Shown here one piece after another: positions 4,106 to 20,476 of a stretch of 28,957 nt of DNA. This DNA comes from Vitrella brassicaformis CCMP3155. Lineage: Eukaryota; Protista; Chromerida. Below the pieces are notes generated by a model that saw only the letters and a program-made list of their open reading frames with translations, was not told where the DNA came from and searched no databases. How positions within the stretch are numbered: position 1 is the stretch's first letter; every line of letters starts with the position of its first letter. Position numbers and translations under genes: made by a program. Location of the stretch: NCBI GenBank assembly GCA_001179505.1, contig CDMY01000701.1, forward strand, positions 1 through 28,957, in the 5' to 3' direction.

Positions 4106-5380
4106 TCAGGTGGTCTCGTGTGTCGTGCGTAGCGAGCAAGGCCGCCGTATAAAATGTGTCTCGAGGAAGTCGAGAAGCCCATTGCATCGCGCATCCATGG
4201 CGGCCTGCACCGCCTCGGACCTCGCCAACCCCAGCGTCGTCGTGTCGATCTGAGGGTGGGACGCACGCGAGAAGAACAAGAAGGAAGTGAGCGACGCACT
4301 CTCGTGCAGTACGCAGCCAGCCAGCTGGCTGCCACACCCCCCTCTGGTCATCGGGAGGTGTGGGGCCGGCTGGGACTATTGCAGTTGTGTCCTATGCCGT
4401 ACCAGTGGCGTGCCGGGGTAGGCGATGGTGTTGCGCAAAAGGACATCACTGATGGCGGCGGCGGCAGACTCCAGGTAGCGACAGAACATGCTGTAAGGAC
4501 AGAGGAGAGAGACATCCGCACACACAGACACACACAGGGCTTGTGTGGTCCTCGCAGCTGTCCAGTCGACTCACTTGGTGCTGGCGGGCTCGAGGCGCAG
4601 GACCTCCATCGTGTACCCGCGAGCGATAGCGAGGGCGTCTGCCTGCAGGTTTGTGACCGGGAGACGGTAGAAGGCCTCCTGCAGGTTGCCGTCAAAGAAC
4701 AGGTCCTTCTCGCAGACAAACCGGCCCAGCATGAGAAGGACATAGTTGAGGAAGCGCCCCGTATTCATGGGTGCCACATGCGACATGACGACCATCGTAT
4801 CCAGCCGCTGGCCGAACTTGCTGAAAGACCGCCGCACTCGACATAACGGTGGAAGAAGGCCGAGTCAGTGGCAGGATTCTTGGTGGCTTCAGGAAGGGCG
4901 TCACCACTGCACGTCCAGTGCTGCCAGGGGCTCGATGAGTCGTGAAGGACTGGATAGCTGCACCCCATCCTGGACAATCTGCGCTGGGAGCCGCTCGTGG
5001 GCGGTGATGGCCACATGCAGGTATCGTCGACGAATTTTCACCACATTCAGTGCGCCATCCAGCAGGGGGGAAGCCGCAACGTCCTCTTGGAGGCCTTGGT
5101 TGATTTGTGTCCTGGTCGACGAACTGATCGCGCACCACCTGCAGACGCCAGCAAACATTCAAAGAATGCCGTGACGGGCTCGACATCGTGCGACAGTGCA
5201 GCAGAGCCCACTTGACGTATTCCTCAATGTTGTTGATGAAGTGAATCTTTGGAGGGCGCACGTCGAAGAGTGTGACGGCATCATACCGCTTGTTCTGCAC
5301 CCGGTCGACAATGTGGAATTGCTGGTTGTCAGTCAACTGCCGGTACGGAGGCAGGCGGGCGCGCATCGCGACGCCGGCGA
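4106..5380 (-). pseudogene. Frameshifted multi-exon fragment, possibly the Rep-helicase linker region of a Helitron-like protein
   Basis: GC3-rich minus-strand segments: YDAVTLFDVRPPKIHFINNIEEYVKW; SHVAPMNTGRFLNYVLLMLGRFVCEKDLFFDGNLQEAF; YLESAAAAISDVLLRNTIAYPGTP; AMDARCNGLLDFLETHF. Frameshifts and stops lie between them. The coding origin is clear from the sequence. The Helitron assignment is recalled motif resemblance only, with no Rep or helicase motifs seen. Confidence 0.4.
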
Positions 5381-6027
5381 GCTGGTTGGCTTGGACACCG
5401 GCGGGTGTTGGTCTCCTCCTGTATTCCTCTTCTCACTCTATCCTTTTCTCCCCAACCCCCAGCGACGAGACACTCTACGTGTATCAGGACGGCGAACAAG
5501 TCCCGGCAGATGCCCAGGTGTACCACACTCACTGCCCGTACGTCACCTGCAACGAACCATACATCGTCAAATACAAAATCGTCAAGGCGTAAGCTCTACA
5601 CATACATACAGTCACGCACACGAGCACAATCACACATCCATCCCATTTCCTTCCTTCCTACCTTGTTCTCGCGGCGAGATAGAGAAGCTGCATTCCGTTC
5701 TGGATGAGCTGTGTACCAAGCATAGTCNNNNNNNNNNNNNNNNNNNNNNNNNNNNNNNNNNNNNNNNNNNNNNNNNNNNNNNNNNNNNNNNNNNNNNNNN
5801 NNNNNNNNNNNNNNNNNNNNNNNNNNNNNNNNNNNNNNNNNNNNNNNNNNNNNNNNNNNNNNNNNNNNNNNNNNNNNNNNNNNNNNNNNNNNNNNNNNNN
5901 NNNNNNNNNNNNNNNNNNNNNNNNNNNNNNNNNNNNNNNNNNNNNNNNNNNNNNNNNNNNNNNNNNNNNNNNNNNNNNNNNNNNNNNNNNNNNNNNNNNN
6001 NNNNNNNNNNNNNNNNNNNNNNNNNNN

Positions 6028-6904
6028 CATGGGTGCCACATGCGACATGACGACCATCGTATCCAGCCGCTGGCCGAACTTGCTGAAAGACCGCCGCACT
6101 CGACATAACGGTGGAAGAAGGCCGAGTCAGTGGCAGGATTCTTGGTGGCTTCAGGAAGGGCGTCACCACTGCACGTCCAGTGCTGCCAGGGGCTCGATGA
6201 GTCGTGAAGGACTGGATAGCTGCACCCCATCCTGGACAATCTGCGCTGGGAGCCGCTCGTGGGCGGTGATGGCCACATGCAGGTATCGTCGACGAATTTT
6301 CACCACATTCAGTGCGCCATCCAGCAGGGGGGAAGCCGCAACGTCCTCTTGGAGGCCTTGGTTGATTTGTGTCCTGGTCGACGAACTGATCGCGCACCAC
6401 CTGCAGACGCCAGCAAACATTCAAAGAATGCCGTGACGGGCTCGACACCGTGCGACAGTGCAGCATAGCCCACTTGACGTATTCTTCAATGCTGTCGATG
6501 AAGTGAAGCTCTGGAGGGCGCACGTCGAAGAGTGTGACGGCATCATCATCCGGTCGGCAATGTGGAATTGCTGATTGTCAGTCAGCTGCCGGTACGCAGG
6601 CAACGCCGGCGAGCTGGTTGGCTTGGACACCGGCGGGCGTTGGTCTCCTTCTGTATTCCTCTTCTCACTCTGTCCTTTTCTCCCCAACCCCCAGCGACGA
6701 GACACTCTACGTGTATCAGGACGGCGAACAAGTCCCGGCAGATGCCCAGGTGTACCACACTCACTGCCCGTACGTCACCTGCAACGAACCATACATCGTC
6801 AAATACAAAATCGTCAAGGCGTAAGCTCTACACATACATACAGTCACGCACACGAGCACAATCACACATCCATCCCATTTCCTTCCTTCCTTCTTACCTT
6901 GTTC
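6028..6904 (+). repeat. Tandem segmental duplicate of 4766-5668
   Basis: The left part is essentially identical at offset 1262. The right part has substitutions and short deletions (RPPELHFIDSIEEY vs RPPKIHFINNIEEY on the minus strand). Similarity ends at taccttgttc (5668/6904). Confidence 0.95.
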
Positions 6905-8116: not shown

Positions 8117-8862
8117 AAAGGGCCCATTCCGGCGACATTTGCTTCATCTGGGCAGCGATTTTTCCGACCCATCCGCATCCATCTTTGCCTTCGTCGATTT
8201 CAAGCATCTGAGCCTTCCGTTCCCCCCAGAGGTACTTGTGCTCTCAGCCGTCGTCAGCAAGGCCACTGCACGGAGAGGTGTCTCCGCGTCCCTCCATCCA
8301 ACACCTCACCCCACCGTGATCATCCCAGCCGGCCAGAACAGGCCGAAGACCGCAGACGAGGGCTGTCTTCGCCAGATCCACGCACCCAGCTTCTCCCCGA
8401 CAAGATCTCGTGGTCGAGACGTCATCTCCGCAGCTCGGCGGGTTCGTTTGAGTAATAGCTCCATCGTACCAGCCCCTGGTATCTCGTGCTTCCTCTGCTG
8501 ATTGGCGCCTCTGCGCGTGGCCGACAAAGACAGGAAGAGCGGGTAAAGGGATAGGACTGATAGGACGGACACTGACTAGTCTTGACACGTGTGCATTTGT
8601 GCGTTCGACTTGTGTGTGTGCGTAGCCAGTGTGGCATTGTGACTCGTTGCCTTTGACTCATCATGACATCAGGTGCTGCAGGGTGATCAGAAAGGGGTAT
8701 CTGAATCATTGATGAGAATCGTGACTGATTGATTCGATCCTCATAGAGAAACGCTTCGCTAGGAAAGGGAGGGAAGCGTACATCTTCCCTTGTCCTCGCT
8801 GTGCCTCTCCTTTTGGTTTCACGGTGGCACCAAACAACGGAAGGAAGGTGCCCTACAAGATC

Positions 8863-8908
8863 AGGGGTGCTTCGGAAGCACCCCTTCGAGAAACCCTAGG
8901 AACCCTAG
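8863..8908 (+). other. Perfect GC-rich hairpin followed by CTAG (Helitron-3'-end-like)
   Basis: AGGGGTGCTTC-G-GAAGCACCCCT at 8863-8885, CTAG at 8896-8899 (10 nt downstream) and again at 8905-8908. Neither CTAG is followed by the canonical T. Confidence 0.35.
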
Positions 8909-9727
8909 ACAGGGCGAAGAGGAGAATCACCCTTTGACCTCATCGCCAATTGCCGACATTCAGTGTGCAGCAGTTGTTTCATTCGCTTTTCATCGTTTCG
9001 ACCTCCCTGTGTTGCTTCCCATCGTCAGCACAGGCAGATTCAGACCAGTTGTTGTGAGCAGCAGCTAGGTGTGTGCATCGTGTGTCACGAGTGACCGCGA
9101 CTGGCTCCCCCCGTATCGCTGGTTAGGGGGTAGCTCAGATCCTTTCCGACAAAAGTAAAAAATAACCGCGCAGATGGTGTGATTCAATCGGATATATACA
9201 CCGGGGGTCCACTCGCAAACGTCGAGAATCTCGACGTGCAGGCCCCATTTTGCGTGTGACCCCCACAAAATGAAATTGCAGAGAAGCAGCCCGCCCAGAT
9301 TGTGTGACACCAATGTGAACCGGCCTGGTGAGAGCCTCTCACACACCAAGCAGCAGCTCCCCGCTCGGTCACGTTCTTTCACAATTGGCACCCTTCTGAC
9401 AGCGCTCCGTTCTCAGCAACCAAAGCANNNNNNNNNNNNNNNNNNNNNNNNNNNNNNNNNNNNNNNNNNNNNNNNNNNNNNNNNNNNNNNNNNNNNNNNN
9501 NNNNNNNNNNNNNNNNNNNNNNNNNNNNNNNNNNNNNNNNNNNNNNNNNNNNNNNNNNNNNNNNNNNNNNNNNNNNNNNNNNNNNNNNNNNNNNNNNNNN
9601 NNNNNNNNNNNNNNNNNNNNNNNNNNNNNNNNNNNNNNNNNNNNNNNNNNNNNNNNNNNNNNNNNNNNNNNNNNNNNNNNNNNNNNNNNNNNNNNNNNNN
9701 NNNNNNNNNNNNNNNNNNNNNNNNNNN

Positions 9728-9984
9728 CCTCACTCACTCTGGTTGGCGAGATATCACTCACTCAATTCTGTATCACCAATACCTATCTGACCTACTGCTT
9801 TCTCTGCAGTGACTTGACAGACACGAACCGCACTCGGCGCATCTGAACCGTCGCTCGAAGGGCAATCAATTCATTGCCAACATCATCACCTCACTCACTC
9901 TGGTTGGCGAGATATCACTCACTCAATTCTGTACCACCAATACCTATCTGACCTACTGCTTTCTCTGCTGTGAGTTGACAGATA
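9728..9984 (+). repeat. 161-bp tandem array, left arm
   Basis: cactcactctggttggcgagatatc recurs at 9731 and 9892 (period 161). The array runs into the gap. Confidence 0.95.
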
Positions 9985-9988
9985 ACTC

Positions 9989-10495
9989 ATGTTTGATATG
10001 GACAGGCGGGAAGAGGCTGAAGACTGGCGAAGTGCCCTTGGATTGCCGCCACGTTTGGATGGCAGAGACCGTCGAGGCCAGTCCCTACTGCGAGTGAGAG
10101 GACCGGGGAATCGTCAGGCTGCAGGAAGGGCGAGAGGTTCTCCACCTGCAGCAGCTGCAGCAGCAGCAGCAGCAGCGGCACCAGCCCCCCCTCCACCGCC
10201 TCCTGCATTGCAAGCGGTCGGCCATGCAATACTGCCACCAATCGTCCCTTCGCCCGGCGAACACGGACCGCTGTTCCCCCCACTCGCCCCTCCGCCACCA
10301 TTTTTTCCCGAAAACATACCGATGCCTCCCCCATACCTCCCTCTCTTGCCCGACATTCAGCCCGACACATCCGACCATATGCTTGATGCTCCGCCTCAGC
10401 CTCAGCAGCCCGCTGCCGCCGCGGCGGAGAGACGTGAACGGATGAATTTCAGTGTCTCTGTCCATGAACGTCCTTTTTTCGCGATTGCAGGTTGA
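9989..10495 (+). CDS. Low-complexity Ala/Pro-rich ORF (168 aa) in the foldback spacer; function unknown
   Basis: The ATG-initiated ORF starts right after the left arm and contains a (GCA)n poly-Ala run and poly-Pro. No domain was recognised. Confidence 0.3.
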   Translation: MFDMDRREEAEDWRSALGLPPRLDGRDRRGQSLLRVRGPGNRQAAGRARGSPPAAAAAAAAAAAPAPPPPPPALQAVGHAILPPIVPSPGEHGPLFPPLAPPPPFFPENIPMPPPYLPLLPDIQPDTSDHMLDAPPQPQQPAAAAAERRERMNFSVSVHERPFFAIAG

Positions 10496-10710
10496 AATGG
10501 CTGGACATATACAAACCGTCCATGCATCTCCTGGAGTGCAACGTGTTCTTTCATCTCGCTGCCTCACTCGTAAAGGGAGACCCAGTTTTCGGTCTGTTGG
10601 GATGCATGCAGGCCCATGAGTCGATGAATCGAGAGGCGCATGTAATGGAGGGGAATCACACGATGAAGGGAAGGGGTGACAACGTCAAGGCGTGCCGTTC
10701 TCAGCTATGA
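10491..10710 (+). pseudogene. Possible C-terminal catalytic-Glu region of an EnSpm/CACTA-type transposase
   Basis: After the acceptor ttttttcgcgattgcag (ends 10490) it reads LKWLDIYKPSMHLLECNVFFHLAASLVKGDPVFGLLGCMQAHESMNREAH. This resembles the K-x-H-x-L…H…GP…(F)E-x-x-N motif of Tnp2/CACTA transposases, but the match is loose. Confidence 0.35.
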
Positions 10711-10929
10711 CAGCAAAGTGAGCACACGGATGACACCTGCGGACGAGTACAATAGACCGCTGCCTGACGTGCCTCTTATCACTGGCCCCTTTGAGGGACA
10801 GCAGTTTCAGGGAGAACTGTGAGAATGCTGTAGCAAACGTTAACGCGAATAGGTGTACCAATCAAGGGCTCATCTGATTGGTCTAGTAGCGCGAATTGTC
10901 TGTATGAATGTATGACTCATTTACTTGAC

Positions 10930-11256
10930 GAATTGAGTGAGTGATATCTCGCCAATCAGAGTGAGTGAGGTGATGATGTTGGCAGTGAATTGATTGCCCT
11001 TCGAGTGACGGTTCAGATGCGCCGAGTGCGGTTCGTGTCTGTCAAGTCACTGCAGAGAAAGCAGTAGGTCAGATAGGTATTGGTGATACAGAATTGAGTG
11101 AGTGATATCTCGCCAACCAGAGTGAGTGAGGTGATGATGTTGGCAGTGAATTGATTGTCCTTCGAGTGACGGTTCAGATGCGCCGGGTGCGGTTCGTGTC
11201 TGTCAAGTCACTGCAGAGAAAGCAGTAGGTCAGATAGGTATTGGTGATACAGAATT
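10930..11256 (-). repeat. 161-bp tandem array, right arm (reverse complement of the left array)
   Basis: aattgagtgagtgatatctc recurs at 10931 and 11092, and gaatt recurs at 11252 (period 161). The array runs into the gap. Confidence 0.95.
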
Positions 11257-12261
11257 NNNNNNNNNNNNNNNNNNNNNNNNNNNNNNNNNNNNNNNNNNNN
11301 NNNNNNNNNNNNNNNNNNNNNNNNNNNNNNNNNNNNNNNNNNNNNNNNNNNNNNNNNNNNNNNNNNNNNNNNNNNNNNNNNNNNNNNNNNNNNNNNNNNN
11401 NNNNNNNNNNNNNNNNNNNNNNNNNNNNNNNNNNNNNNNNNNNNNNNNNNNNNNNNNNNNNNNNNNNNNNNNNNNNNNNNNNNNNNNNNNNNNNNNNNNN
11501 NNNNNNNNNNNNNNNNNNNNNNNNNNNNNNNNNNNNNNNNNNNNNNNNNNNNNNNNCCGCGGTGCTTTGGTTGCTGAGAACGGAGCGCTGTCAGAAGGGT
11601 GCCAATTGTGAAAGAACGTGACCGAGCGGGGAGCTGCTGCTTGGTGTGTGAGAGGCTCTCACCAGGCCGGTTCACATTGGTGTCACACAATCTGGGCGGG
11701 CTGCTTCTCTGCAATTTCATTTTGTGGGGGTCACATGCAAAATGGGGCCTGCACGTCGAGATTCTCGACGTTTGCGAGTGGACCCCCGGTGTATATATCC
11801 GATTGAATCACACCATCTGCGCGGTTATTTTTTACTTTTGTCGGAAAGGATCTGAGCTACCCCCTAACCAGCGATACGGGGGGAGCCAGTCGCGGTGACA
11901 CGTCGTGTGTTCGCGCGTTCGTTCGTCGTTCGTCGTCCGATCGTTCGTTCATTCGTTTGTTGTTCCCGTCCGTGTGACAGACAGTCAGTCGTTGATAAGA
12001 GCAGTCCCCCGTGTGTGCGAACAGAGATAGCTTGAGCCTTCAGTAACAGAAACCTTCACACACCAATCAAACACCCACTCTCACTCACCAGTAACACTTC
12101 ATCCAGTATCCTCGAGCTTTGTGCTATTACTCATAGCACATCGGACACAGACACCGCAGGACAGAAGAGGAGGCGGTAACACAGGTCGACTTGACTCGTG
12201 TGCTTGTCGTCATTTATTCTTAATTGTGTCTCTTATCGATTGGTCAATAGCGCTAATTTTC

Positions 12262-20127: not shown

Positions 20128-20476
20128 GCTGCCTCTCGAGGCACCAGCGGATTCAATGCACCCATGCACACGCACACAGACACGCATTGAGGCGTCAACT
20201 GGCCATGGAGGGTCTCTGTCAAGCGGTTCATTCACATGATCCATCCATGGCCAACCAACACACACATGCACACACCACGCACTCACTCACACACACACAC
20301 ACACAGTCACTCAGACAGCCATGCACTCAGACAATCACCCACTCGCTCACACACACGTGCAAGCCAATATCTACATTATTGCGATTATGCACAGTGGGCA
20401 ACAGGGATGGGACGATGCGCTGTGGCAGCGACAACCTGAGAGCTCTCTGAGCATGAACGCTCTCTTCTCAACTCAC

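What the first reader, a model, noticed from the sequence alone, without database searches (positions are those of the whole stretch)
9076..11907. Foldback-like element with ~0.9-kb-plus inverted arms built from a unique outer segment and 161-bp arrays
The architecture is outer TIR domain (TGTCAC termini), internal tandem array and asymmetric inner ends. The flanking near-duplication can be read as 7 bp (catcgtg/cgtcgtg) or 10 bp (catcgtgtgt/cgtcgtgtgt). This matches Galileo (P superfamily, 7-bp TSD) or FB/Mutator-like foldbacks (9-11 bp), but the termini match neither consensus I know. I am not aware of such elements being described in chromerids, so it may be a new family. It could form a large cruciform and promote rearrangements.
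Basis: partly seen in the sequence, partly recalled or inferred. Interest (0 to 1): 0.75.

Follow-up and report, generated by a model that had tools for sequence, protein, structure and literature searches.

The report
RAG1/Transib-like transposon copy in Vitrella
The long inverted repeat is a real, precisely inserted, non-autonomous copy of a multi-copy cut-and-paste DNA transposon of the alga Vitrella brassicaformis, whose longer relatives carry a very divergent transposase related to RAG1, the enzyme behind vertebrate antibody-gene rearrangement; no such element turned up for chromerids in the literature searched.

Summary
The inverted arms are real. Each is a 332/338-bp outer segment (1 mismatch) plus a 161-bp array. 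[quoted passage not shown] Aligning 19 copy ends puts the termini at CGCGACTGGCT, so the element is 9096-11894. Seven paralogous uninterrupted sites, five read base by base, show a precise insertion with a 5-bp TSD, GTGAC. The TGTCAC/GTGACA 'termini' are a palindrome in the target repeat.

The family has at least 17 exact termini. The arrays repeatedly break the assembly. Both gaps are fixed 300-N placeholders at the outer/array junction.

The window copy is an internal-deletion derivative. It keeps a decayed last exon of a gene found in longer copies (C80, C226, C753).

That gene has no Pfam hit, but three lines tie it to RAG1:
- Profile chain: Vitrella to 20 distant proteins (hhalign 99.4%, E 7e-22); their profile hits only RAG1/RAG1L in the PDB (E 2e-13).
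- AlphaFold model: about the top 40 Foldseek hits are RAG1; VIA-align Z is 8.4-10.1.
- ESM Atlas agrees.

It is not Galileo/P or FB/Mutator. It is a RAG1/Transib-like element (the CMCT clade: CACTA/EnSpm, Mirage, Chapaev, Transib) with unusual CG ends and very long array-bearing repeats. No intact copy was found. The scan had not noted this element before.

The parts
8850..9095 (+). Left flank. It is part of another interspersed repeat (the target), and its last 5 bp (9091-9095, GTGAC) are the left TSD copy.
   Evidence: 13 other genomic copies; the empty sites read ...CACGAGTGACACGTCG... with one GTGAC.
9096..9427 (+). Left terminal inverted repeat (TIR), outer unique segment. The terminus reads CGCGACTGGCTCCCCC.
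   Evidence: 19 aligned ends all start here; 1 mismatch to the right arm over 332 nt; 27 genomic matches.
9428..9727 (.). Assembly gap (300-N placeholder) at the outer/array junction.
   Evidence: all four gaps in the window are exactly 300 N; on C226 and C937 the outer segment joins the array directly.
9728..9982 (-). Left subterminal array of the 161-bp unit (1.6 units sequenced), carrying 4 copies of the 10-mer GAGTGAGTGA.
   Evidence: family D2, pairs I2/I3; (the first ~50 nt of the unit are the best conserved across copies).
9983..10425 (+). Central part A. This subterminal internal region also lies next to the array in the long copies on C937 and C15.
   Evidence: 87-88% identity to C937:1296-1710 and C15:3083-3497. 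There it is followed further inward by a homolog of the C753 511-aa ORF.
10426..10929 (+). Central part B. It holds the decayed last exon of the transposase gene (10492-10710, then 10679-10825 after a frame break), with motifs MHLLECNV and QAHESMNRE.
   Evidence: 61% aa identity to the C753 140-aa ORF; 93% and 80% to the last exon on C80..
10930..11256 (+). Right subterminal array (2.0 units of 161 bp, 98% identical), carrying 4 copies of GAGTGAGTGA.
11257..11556 (.). Assembly gap (300-N placeholder) at the array/outer junction.
11557..11894 (-). Right TIR, outer unique segment. The terminus, reverse-complemented, reads CGCGACTGGCTCCCCC.
11895..12140 (+). Right flank, part of the same target repeat. 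Its first 5 bp (11895-11899, GTGAC) are the right TSD copy.
   Evidence: 19 other matches. In C995, C456, C935, C767, C772, C639 and C837 the match overlaps the left-flank match by exactly 5 bp.

Best explanation
Window 9096-11894 is a non-autonomous, internally deleted copy of a multi-copy cut-and-paste DNA transposon family of Vitrella brassicaformis.

Its ends are very long terminal inverted repeats. Each is a ~335-bp outer segment ending in CGCGACTGGCT, followed by a subterminal array of 161-bp units. It inserted precisely into another repeat and duplicated 5 bp (GTGAC).

Longer copies carry, between the same arms, a multi-exon gene for a very divergent DDE transposase of the RAG1/Transib-like (CMCT) group. 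Its motifs are SGDGS (first D), GDQK followed 19 residues later by CxxC (second D plus the ZnC2-like pair), D-I-L-H, H-x4-H and E-S-x-N-R.

The window copy keeps only the two ends of that internal region, including a decayed last exon. It would therefore have to be moved in trans.

Shown: the arm anatomy, the termini, the 5-bp TSD with empty sites, multi-copy status, physical linkage of arms and gene, and homology and fold similarity of the gene to the RAG1 core.

Inferred: that this transposase binds the conserved 16-nt termini and/or the repeated motifs in the arrays, that it cuts and pastes by a RAG/Transib-type mechanism, and that the family was active recently.
For: Termini and TSD:
- One search gives a sharp common terminus in 19 ends.
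- In some searches, left- and right-flank matches overlap by exactly 5 bp in 7 paralogous sites. Five were read base by base.

Multi-copy family:
- One search finds 27 matches to the outer segment.
- One search finds 17 exact 16-nt termini.
- Many copies sit at contig ends.
- A second paired copy lies at C346:18343-20182, with arms 99.6% identical over 281 bp.

Linkage to the gene:
- On C753, arms 88% identical enclose 4.3 kb with ORFs of 344, 511 and 140 aa on one strand.
- The arm on C226 lies 3.5 kb from a 652-aa ORF, database protein P0001.
- C937 and C15 show arm, central part A, then an ORF511 homolog.
- The window's central ORF is the last exon of the gene.
- C80 carries that exon on the same strand as the CxxC and first-D exons.

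RAG1 kinship:
- ESM Atlas gives 0.97 by features and TM 0.64-0.70 by structure to RAG1 clusters.
- The exhaustive profile search finds 20 distant hits on the catalytic core.
- hhalign of the Vitrella family against those hits gives 99.4% probability, E 6.8e-22 over 183 columns.
- The profile of those hits matches only RAG1/RAG1L in the PDB, best E 2e-13. The alignment runs through the stretch I read as the D708-to-C727xxC730 region, the DALH motif, the H-x4-H pair (H937/H942) and E962; the residue numbers are my knowledge of mouse RAG1.
- The AlphaFold2 core has pLDDT 70-89.
- Foldseek ranks 1-42 are all RAG1, followed by HzTransib and BbRAGL.
- VIA-align gives Z 8.4-10.1 over 212-235 residues to RAG1, 8.2 to BbRAGL and 5.5-5.9 to HzTransib, with unrelated chains at 4.9 or less.

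The diverged paralog on C945 (25-46% identity) keeps all the motifs. The literature describes Transib as the only eukaryotic superfamily with 5-bp TSDs (PMC1131882).
Against: - No intact autonomous copy was found. C226 has a frameshift and a stop, lacks the 3' exons and runs off its contig. C80 is frameshifted at the second D. C753 has lost the core.
- The Vitrella profile alone finds nothing in Pfam or the PDB, so the link to RAG1 is transitive plus structural.
- The exon with H-x4-H and E is not significantly aligned to the distant group (hhalign E 0.34). The third catalytic residue is therefore assigned by motif and position only.
- The termini start CGC, not the CAC that is invariant in Transib ends and recombination signal sequences (PMC1131882).
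- The second paired copy (C346) shares only 3 bp (CAA) between its flanks.
- RAG1, BbRAGL and HzTransib are the only CMCT-clade structures that appeared among the PDB matches here. Other CMCT lineages also hit RAG1 by HHpred (PMC12730594). A RAG1 top hit therefore does not by itself place the family inside Transib proper.
- The central part A ORF shows no significant similarity to the C753 N-terminal ORF.
Confidence: 0.85

Rival explanations
1. Assembly artefact. On this view the inverted structure comes from an inverted mis-join or from collapse of a single arm or satellite, helped by the two scaffold gaps.
For: There are two symmetric 300-N gaps inside the arms. Many family copies end contigs. 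The C592 'pair' spans a gap and has no TSD. The orientation of the middle piece cannot be verified.
Against: Both outer ends abut one and the same target. Seven uninterrupted paralogous sites match the left and right flanks with a 5-bp overlap. Paired inverted arms recur on C346 and C753.
Confidence: 0.03
2. One reading: a Foldback-type element of the Galileo/P superfamily, or an FB/Mutator-like foldback.
For: It has long inverted arms containing tandem arrays and a short middle.
Against: The TSD is 5 bp, not 7-8 or 9-11. The gene linked to the arms is RAG1-like by profile and by fold, and no P/THAP9 or MULE family was detected in any Pfam scan.
Confidence: 0.03
3. The arms belong to a transposon mobilised by some other, unidentified transposase. 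On this view the RAG1-like gene is a passenger or a neighbour that was captured or co-located by nesting in transposon-rich DNA.
For: No intact copy with both ends and a complete gene was seen. The contigs are transposon-rich and nested: C647 and C753 have insertions inside the outer segment. The termini lack the CAC typical of the group.
Against: The same gene lies in the same orientation relative to the arms in at least five separate places: C753, C226, C937/C15, C80 and the window. The deletion derivatives keep the gene's two ends, as expected for derivatives of an autonomous element. The 5-bp TSD matches the RAG/Transib type (PMC1131882).
Confidence: 0.08

Closest known systems
Transib superfamily (Kapitonov & Jurka 2005, PMC1131882; HzTransib structures 6PQN/6PQX)
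   Same: It has a 5-bp TSD. The transposase is related to the RAG1 core, with a DDE triad plus a CxxC pair after the second D and an H-x4-H before the E. The target is GC-rich and palindromic. The family produces non-autonomous deletion derivatives.
   Different: The termini begin CGCGAC instead of the invariant CAC of the heptamer, and no heptamer/nonamer pattern was recognised. The TIRs are about 0.6-0.9 kb with 161-bp arrays, against about 38-60 bp. The protein is too divergent for Pfam. Its structure and sequence are closer to RAG1/RAGL (Z 8-10) than to HzTransib (Z 5.5-5.9). The host is an alveolate alga.
RAG-like (RAGL/ProtoRAG) transposons, including AanRAGL of the pelagophyte Aureococcus (PMC9435367)
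   Same: It has a 5-bp TSD and a unicellular algal host. RAG1/RAG1L are the best structural and profile matches.
   Different: No RAG2-like gene was recognised in the copies examined; this check was not exhaustive. The TIRs do not start CAC. The similarity is far weaker than among RAG1L proteins.
Chapaev (Pfam DUF1280) and the wider CMCT clade: EnSpm/CACTA, Mirage, Chapaev, Transib, Plavaka, ESTA, Lanisha (PMC12730594, PMC3985635)
   Same: [quoted passage not shown] Four of the 20 intermediate proteins give weak DUF1280 hits. CACTA elements also have subterminal repeats (my knowledge).
   Different: The termini are CG...CG, not CA...TG. No Vitrella protein hits DUF1280 or Transposase_21. The TSD is 5 bp, whereas non-Transib members make 2-4 bp (Chapaev 4 bp, from memory).
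Foldback elements (Drosophila FB, Galileo)
   Same: The gross anatomy is alike: long inverted arms containing tandem repeats and making up most of a short element.
   Different: The TSD length, the termini and the associated transposase all differ, so the resemblance is architectural only.

Membership tests
Transib superfamily | 5-bp target-site duplication | tested here: met
   The window has GTGAC on both sides. In 7 empty paralogous sites the flank matches overlap by 5 bp. Caveat: the C346 copy shows only 3 shared bp.
Transib superfamily | Transposase homologous to the RAG1 catalytic core | tested here: met
   The link is transitive. hhalign gives 99.4%, E 6.8e-22 to the intermediate group, whose profile hits only RAG1/RAG1L in the PDB at 2e-13. 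Foldseek ranks 1-42 are RAG1, and VIA-align Z is 8.4-10.1. Direct Pfam and PDB sequence searches are negative.
Transib superfamily | Complete DDE triad with C(2)C and H(3-4)H motifs | tested here: inconclusive
   D1 (SGDGS), D2 (GDQK) and CxxC are aligned with significance. H-x4-H (MHLLECH) and E (AHESMNR) are present and conserved in the paralogs on C80, C753 and C945. Their alignment to the reference group is not significant.
Transib superfamily | TIRs beginning 5'-CAC (heptamer CACAATG-like) with a nonamer after a 12/23-bp spacer | tested here: not met
   The termini are CGCGACTGGCT in 17 exact copies. The TSD fixes the boundary unambiguously.
RAGL (RAG1L+RAG2L) transposon | Convergent RAG2-like (Kelch-propeller) gene inside the element | tested here: inconclusive
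   Pfam scans of the long ORFs of the C753 and C226 copies gave no Kelch or RAG2 hit. All copies are degenerate, and not every frame was searched.
CMCT clade (PMC12730594) | [quoted passage not shown] | tested here: met
   The motifs were seen. The TSD is 5 bp.
CMCT clade (PMC12730594) | 5'-CA...TG-3' termini (stated to hold 'in most cases') | tested here: not met
   The termini are 5'-CG...CG-3'.
Chapaev | Transposase matching Pfam DUF1280 (PMC3985635) | tested here: not met
   No Vitrella protein or exon hits DUF1280. Only 4 of the 20 intermediates do, and weakly (best E 3e-4).
Galileo / P superfamily | 7-8 bp TSD and a P/THAP9-type transposase | tested here: not met
   The TSD is 5 bp. The linked transposase is RAG1-like, and no Tnp_P_element hit appeared.
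FB / Mutator-like foldback | 9-11 bp TSD | tested here: not met
   The TSD is 5 bp.

The most novel reading that the evidence does not exclude
The Vitrella family, together with the 20 unnamed distant relatives (one from the arbuscular-mycorrhizal fungus Entrophospora, the rest from metagenomes or unnamed assemblies), would represent an undescribed deep lineage of the RAG1/Transib/Chapaev group. Its traits would be a 5-bp TSD, CG rather than CA termini, and kilobase-scale TIRs with subterminal arrays. It would be recently active in a chromerid. It would give a new outgroup for asking how RAG1-type end recognition (the CAC heptamer) and the 5-bp staggered integration arose.
Probability: 0.35. 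Interest if true: 0.78.

Novelty: new variant of a known kind. Interest (0 to 1): 0.62.

Why it matters
RAG1, the recombinase behind vertebrate adaptive immunity, descends from Transib/RAGL transposons. These are few and mostly animal. One broad screen recovered 35 Transib transposases (bioRxiv 10.1101/2021.09.26.461848), and one study reports an element in a pelagophyte alga (PMC9435367).

A family in a chromerid, a photosynthetic relative of apicomplexan parasites, extends the host range into the alveolates.

It keeps the hallmark 5-bp duplication and the catalytic and zinc motifs. It lacks the CAC end that is considered essential for RAG and Transib cleavage. It also carries very long array-bearing repeats. 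That combination makes end recognition in this enzyme group experimentally comparable across lineages.

Practically, the family explains a class of assembly breaks and placeholder gaps in the Vitrella genome, and its proteins are currently annotated only as 'unnamed protein product'.

Tried and rejected
- Pfam scans on every ORF or exon and on P0001 gave nothing.
- phmmer of P0001 and of single exons against the PDB gave nothing relevant. The Vitrella profile A3 against the PDB also gave nothing.
- The word-based protein search found only the Vitrella protein itself.
- The first two fragment alignments (A1, A2) were scattered by MAFFT and discarded. A3 was used instead.
- hhalign of the last-exon alignment A6 against the distant group was not significant.
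- I expected the central part A ORF to match the C753 N-terminal ORF. BLASTP says no.
- The C592 111403/113432 'pair' has no TSD and spans a gap, so it was not used.
- The C346 flank is single-copy, so no empty site was available to settle its TSD.
- No TIRs were found for the diverged C945 paralog in the 5.6 kb fetched.
- No LTR-type direct repeat of the target sequence was found within the window.
- No phylogeny against Repbase Transib, Chapaev or EnSpm references could be made, because no reference sequences were available through the tools.
Exons were searched by reference one at a time, and the only multi-exon proteins used are database entries as deposited (P0001, P0003).
Full report
**What is there.** The window is contig C701 of a 72.7-Mb, 1064-contig genome. 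A database protein encoded by a sister copy names the organism as Vitrella brassicaformis CCMP3155.

Between about 9087 and 11903 there are two inverted arms at 97-99% complementarity. Each arm has an outer unique segment of 332/338 nt, with a single mismatch between the arms. Each also has an array of a 161-bp unit. A 947-bp centre lies between the arms.

**The gaps.** All four N runs in the window are exactly 300 N, so they are placeholders rather than length estimates. The two gaps in the finding both lie at the outer-segment/array junction.

In the gap-free copies on C226 and C937 the outer segment continues directly into the array. From the phase of the flanking array sequence, I estimate that the missing stretch holds a partial unit of at least about 70 bp plus an unknown number of 161-bp units.

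No reading frame crosses the gaps, and the ends of the element are unaffected. Because both gaps sit inside inverted arrays, the orientation of the middle piece (9728-11256) in the scaffold cannot be verified.

**True ends and target-site duplication.** The outer segment has 27 matches elsewhere in the genome. The array unit and the centre also recur.

Aligning 19 ends shows that all copies start at CGCGACTGGCT, with nothing conserved outside that point. A pattern search finds 17 exact copies of the 16-nt terminus. The element is therefore 9096-11894.

Its flanks belong to another interspersed repeat. In seven other copies of that repeat (C995, C456, C935, C767, C772, C639, C837) the match to the left flank and the match to the right flank overlap by exactly 5 bp.

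Five of these sites were read base by base. They show ...CACGAGTGACACGTCG... with a single GTGAC, whereas the window has GTGAC on each side of the element. This establishes a precise insertion with a 5-bp TSD and rules out an inverted mis-join.

The target is itself a palindrome (GTGTCAC-GA-GTGACAC). After the duplication it looked like extra inverted termini with a 7- or 10-bp near-duplication.

**Other copies.**
- C346:18343-20182 is a second short copy with paired arms that are 99.6% identical over 281 bp. It also contains a 300-N gap, and its flanks share only CAA. The flank is single-copy, so no empty site was available.
- On C753, arms 88% identical enclose 4.3 kb.
- Many young copies, 95-97% identical to the window's outer segment, stop at contig ends (C735, C404, C309, C584, C144, C937, C226, C15, C865). 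The arrays evidently break the assembly.

**The gene.** The C753 copy has ORFs of 344, 511 and 140 aa on one strand between its arms.

The 72-aa ORF in the window's centre (10492-10710) is 61% identical to the C753 140-aa ORF. It is 93% identical to the corresponding exon on C80.

The 511-aa ORF has a 652-aa homolog next to the C226 arm, which is database protein P0001.

C80 carries, on one strand, an exon with the first D, an exon with CxxC, a middle exon and the last exon. C937 and C15 show arm, central part A and then an ORF511 homolog.

The window copy thus keeps only the two ends of the internal region. That is the usual form of a non-autonomous deletion derivative.

All the longer copies seen are damaged:
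- C226 has a frameshift and a stop, lacks the 3' exons and runs off its contig.
- C80 is frameshifted at the second D.
- C753 has lost the core.

A diverged paralog on C945 (25-46% identity) keeps the motifs SGDGS, SDQ, CQFC, HLLMCH and NAHESMN in long open frames.

**What the gene is.** Pfam, the PDB by sequence, and the word-based search gave nothing. The ESM Atlas pointed to RAG1, with 0.97 by features and TM 0.64-0.70 by structure. I then tested this lead in two independent ways.

1. Profile chain.
   - A by-reference alignment of P0001 with exon translations (A3) was searched against 1.84 billion representatives. Apart from Vitrella paralogs, 20 distant proteins matched at E 4e-6 to 1e-3, all on the catalytic core.
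   - One of these is from the fungus Entrophospora sp. SA101. The others looked up are unnamed.
   - hhalign of A3 against their alignment (A4) gives 99.4% probability, E 6.8e-22 over 183 columns. SGDGS, ENY, GDxK...CxxC and DxLH are in register.
   - The A4 profile hits only RAG1/RAG1L chains in the whole PDB: E 2e-13 for 3JBW, 1.3e-10 for amphioxus RAG1L 6B40, and 1.9e-10 for mouse 4WWX.
   - That alignment runs through the second-D-to-CxxC stretch, the DALH motif, the H-x4-H pair and the E-S-G-N-K motif. From my knowledge of mouse RAG1 I read these as D708, C727/C730, H937/H942 and E962.

2. Structure.
   - An AlphaFold2 model of P0001 built with alignment A5 has a confident RNase-H-like core, with pLDDT 70-89 over residues 450-620.
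   - Foldseek ranks 1-42 are all RAG1 (E 1.8e-5 to 1.5e-3). HzTransib (1.3e-2) and BbRAGL (2.7e-2) follow, and only then generic RNase H.
   - VIA-align gives Z 8.4-10.1 over 212-235 residues to RAG1 residues of about 500-815 (entry numbering). It gives Z 8.2 to BbRAGL and Z 5.5-5.9 to HzTransib, with unrelated chains at 4.9 or less.

Weak points remain. The Vitrella profile alone does not reach the PDB. The last-exon alignment is not significantly matched, so the H-x4-H pair and the final E are assigned by motif, spacing and conservation only.

Each exon was searched by reference, and the only multi-exon proteins used were database entries as deposited.

**Comparison with what is known.** Transib is described as the only eukaryotic superfamily with 5-bp TSDs. 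Its TIRs start with an invariant CAC in a CACAATG heptamer. RAG-mediated transposition gives mostly 5-bp TSDs and occasionally 4- or 3-bp ones (PMC1131882).

RAGL elements with 5-bp TSDs and CAC ends exist in the pelagophyte Aureococcus. Transib-like proteins are reported from bacteria, fungi and plants (PMC9435367).

The broader CMCT clade shares the C(2)C and H(3-4)H motifs, mostly CA...TG termini and 2-5 bp TSDs. Other members of that clade also hit RAG1 by HHpred (PMC12730594). Pfam DUF1280 corresponds to Chapaev transposases and clusters with RAG1 (PMC3985635). Four of my 20 intermediates give weak DUF1280 hits and one a weak RAG1 hit.

The safe placement is therefore the RAG1/Transib-like (CMCT) group. 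Within it, the 5-bp TSD points to the Transib/RAGL side. Two features argue for a distinct lineage: the CG termini, and the 0.6-0.9-kb TIRs with arrays.

I found no paper that mentions Transib together with Vitrella. Neither of the two papers that name Vitrella brassicaformis together with DNA transposons appears, from title and abstract, to describe such an element; I did not read them.

**Likely mechanism.** The following steps are inferred. A transposase supplied in trans recognises the conserved 16-nt termini. It may also recognise the repeated sites in the arrays.

Each 161-bp unit holds two copies of GAGTGAGTGA. Eight occur in the window, all in the arrays and mirror-oriented, against 0.13 expected by chance. 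The first ~50 nt of the unit are the best conserved across diverged copies.

The element would be excised and then integrated with a 5-bp stagger. From general knowledge, however, a 947-bp spacer makes extrusion unlikely. The visible consequence of the structure here is assembly breakage.

**Verdict.** The termini, the TSD and the family assignment are wrong.

It is a new variant of a known kind: a RAG1/Transib-like DNA transposon family in a chromerid. The window holds a non-autonomous copy of it.

Noticed in passing
window 9080-9095 with 11895-11905; empty sites L088-L092: The target of the insertion is itself a near-perfect palindrome (GTGTCAC-GA-GTGACAC) within another interspersed repeat of at least 13 copies. 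What that host repeat is was not determined, and no LTR-type partner was found in the window.
   Followed up: partly
window 4766-5065 vs 6028-6327, and 5368-5659 vs 6600-6891: Two direct repeats at 99-100% identity, spaced about 1.25 kb apart. One starts immediately after the 300-N gap at 5728-6027. This may be a duplication created by scaffolding or a genuine tandem repeat.
   Followed up: no
C346:18283-18342 and 20183-20242 (L059): The C346 copy sits inside what reads as one continuous open reading frame (...AVQEAAL|K|AIDQMMDIMGEQ...). Removing the element restores the frame. It is either an insertion into a coding exon or is treated as an intron.
   Followed up: partly
C647:12199 / 21229 and C753:2461 / 3817: In two copies the outer TIR segment is split by other DNA at nearly the same position (query positions ~163-198). 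The inserts are about 9 kb and 1.35 kb. These may be nested insertions into the arm.
   Followed up: no
L082:503-1282 (+), C226: A 259-aa ORF on the opposite strand lies where the transposase's 3' exons are deleted in the C226 copy. It is partly duplicated across a gap and has no Pfam hit. I did not test whether it is a second element gene (for example a RAG2-like partner) or an unrelated insert.
   Followed up: partly
proteins P0006-P0025: About 20 mostly unnamed proteins, one from the mycorrhizal fungus Entrophospora sp. SA101, form a group with a complete RAG1-like core (GDG, GGDxKFL...CxWC, DxLHLxLR, YxHxxxxH, QGxEKxN). The group is barely covered by Pfam, with only weak DUF1280 hits.
   Followed up: partly
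window 11002-11009 (CGAGTGAC within the 161-bp unit) vs 9088-9095: The 8-mer CGAGTGAC at the insertion target also occurs inside each array unit. This is probably coincidence.
   Followed up: no
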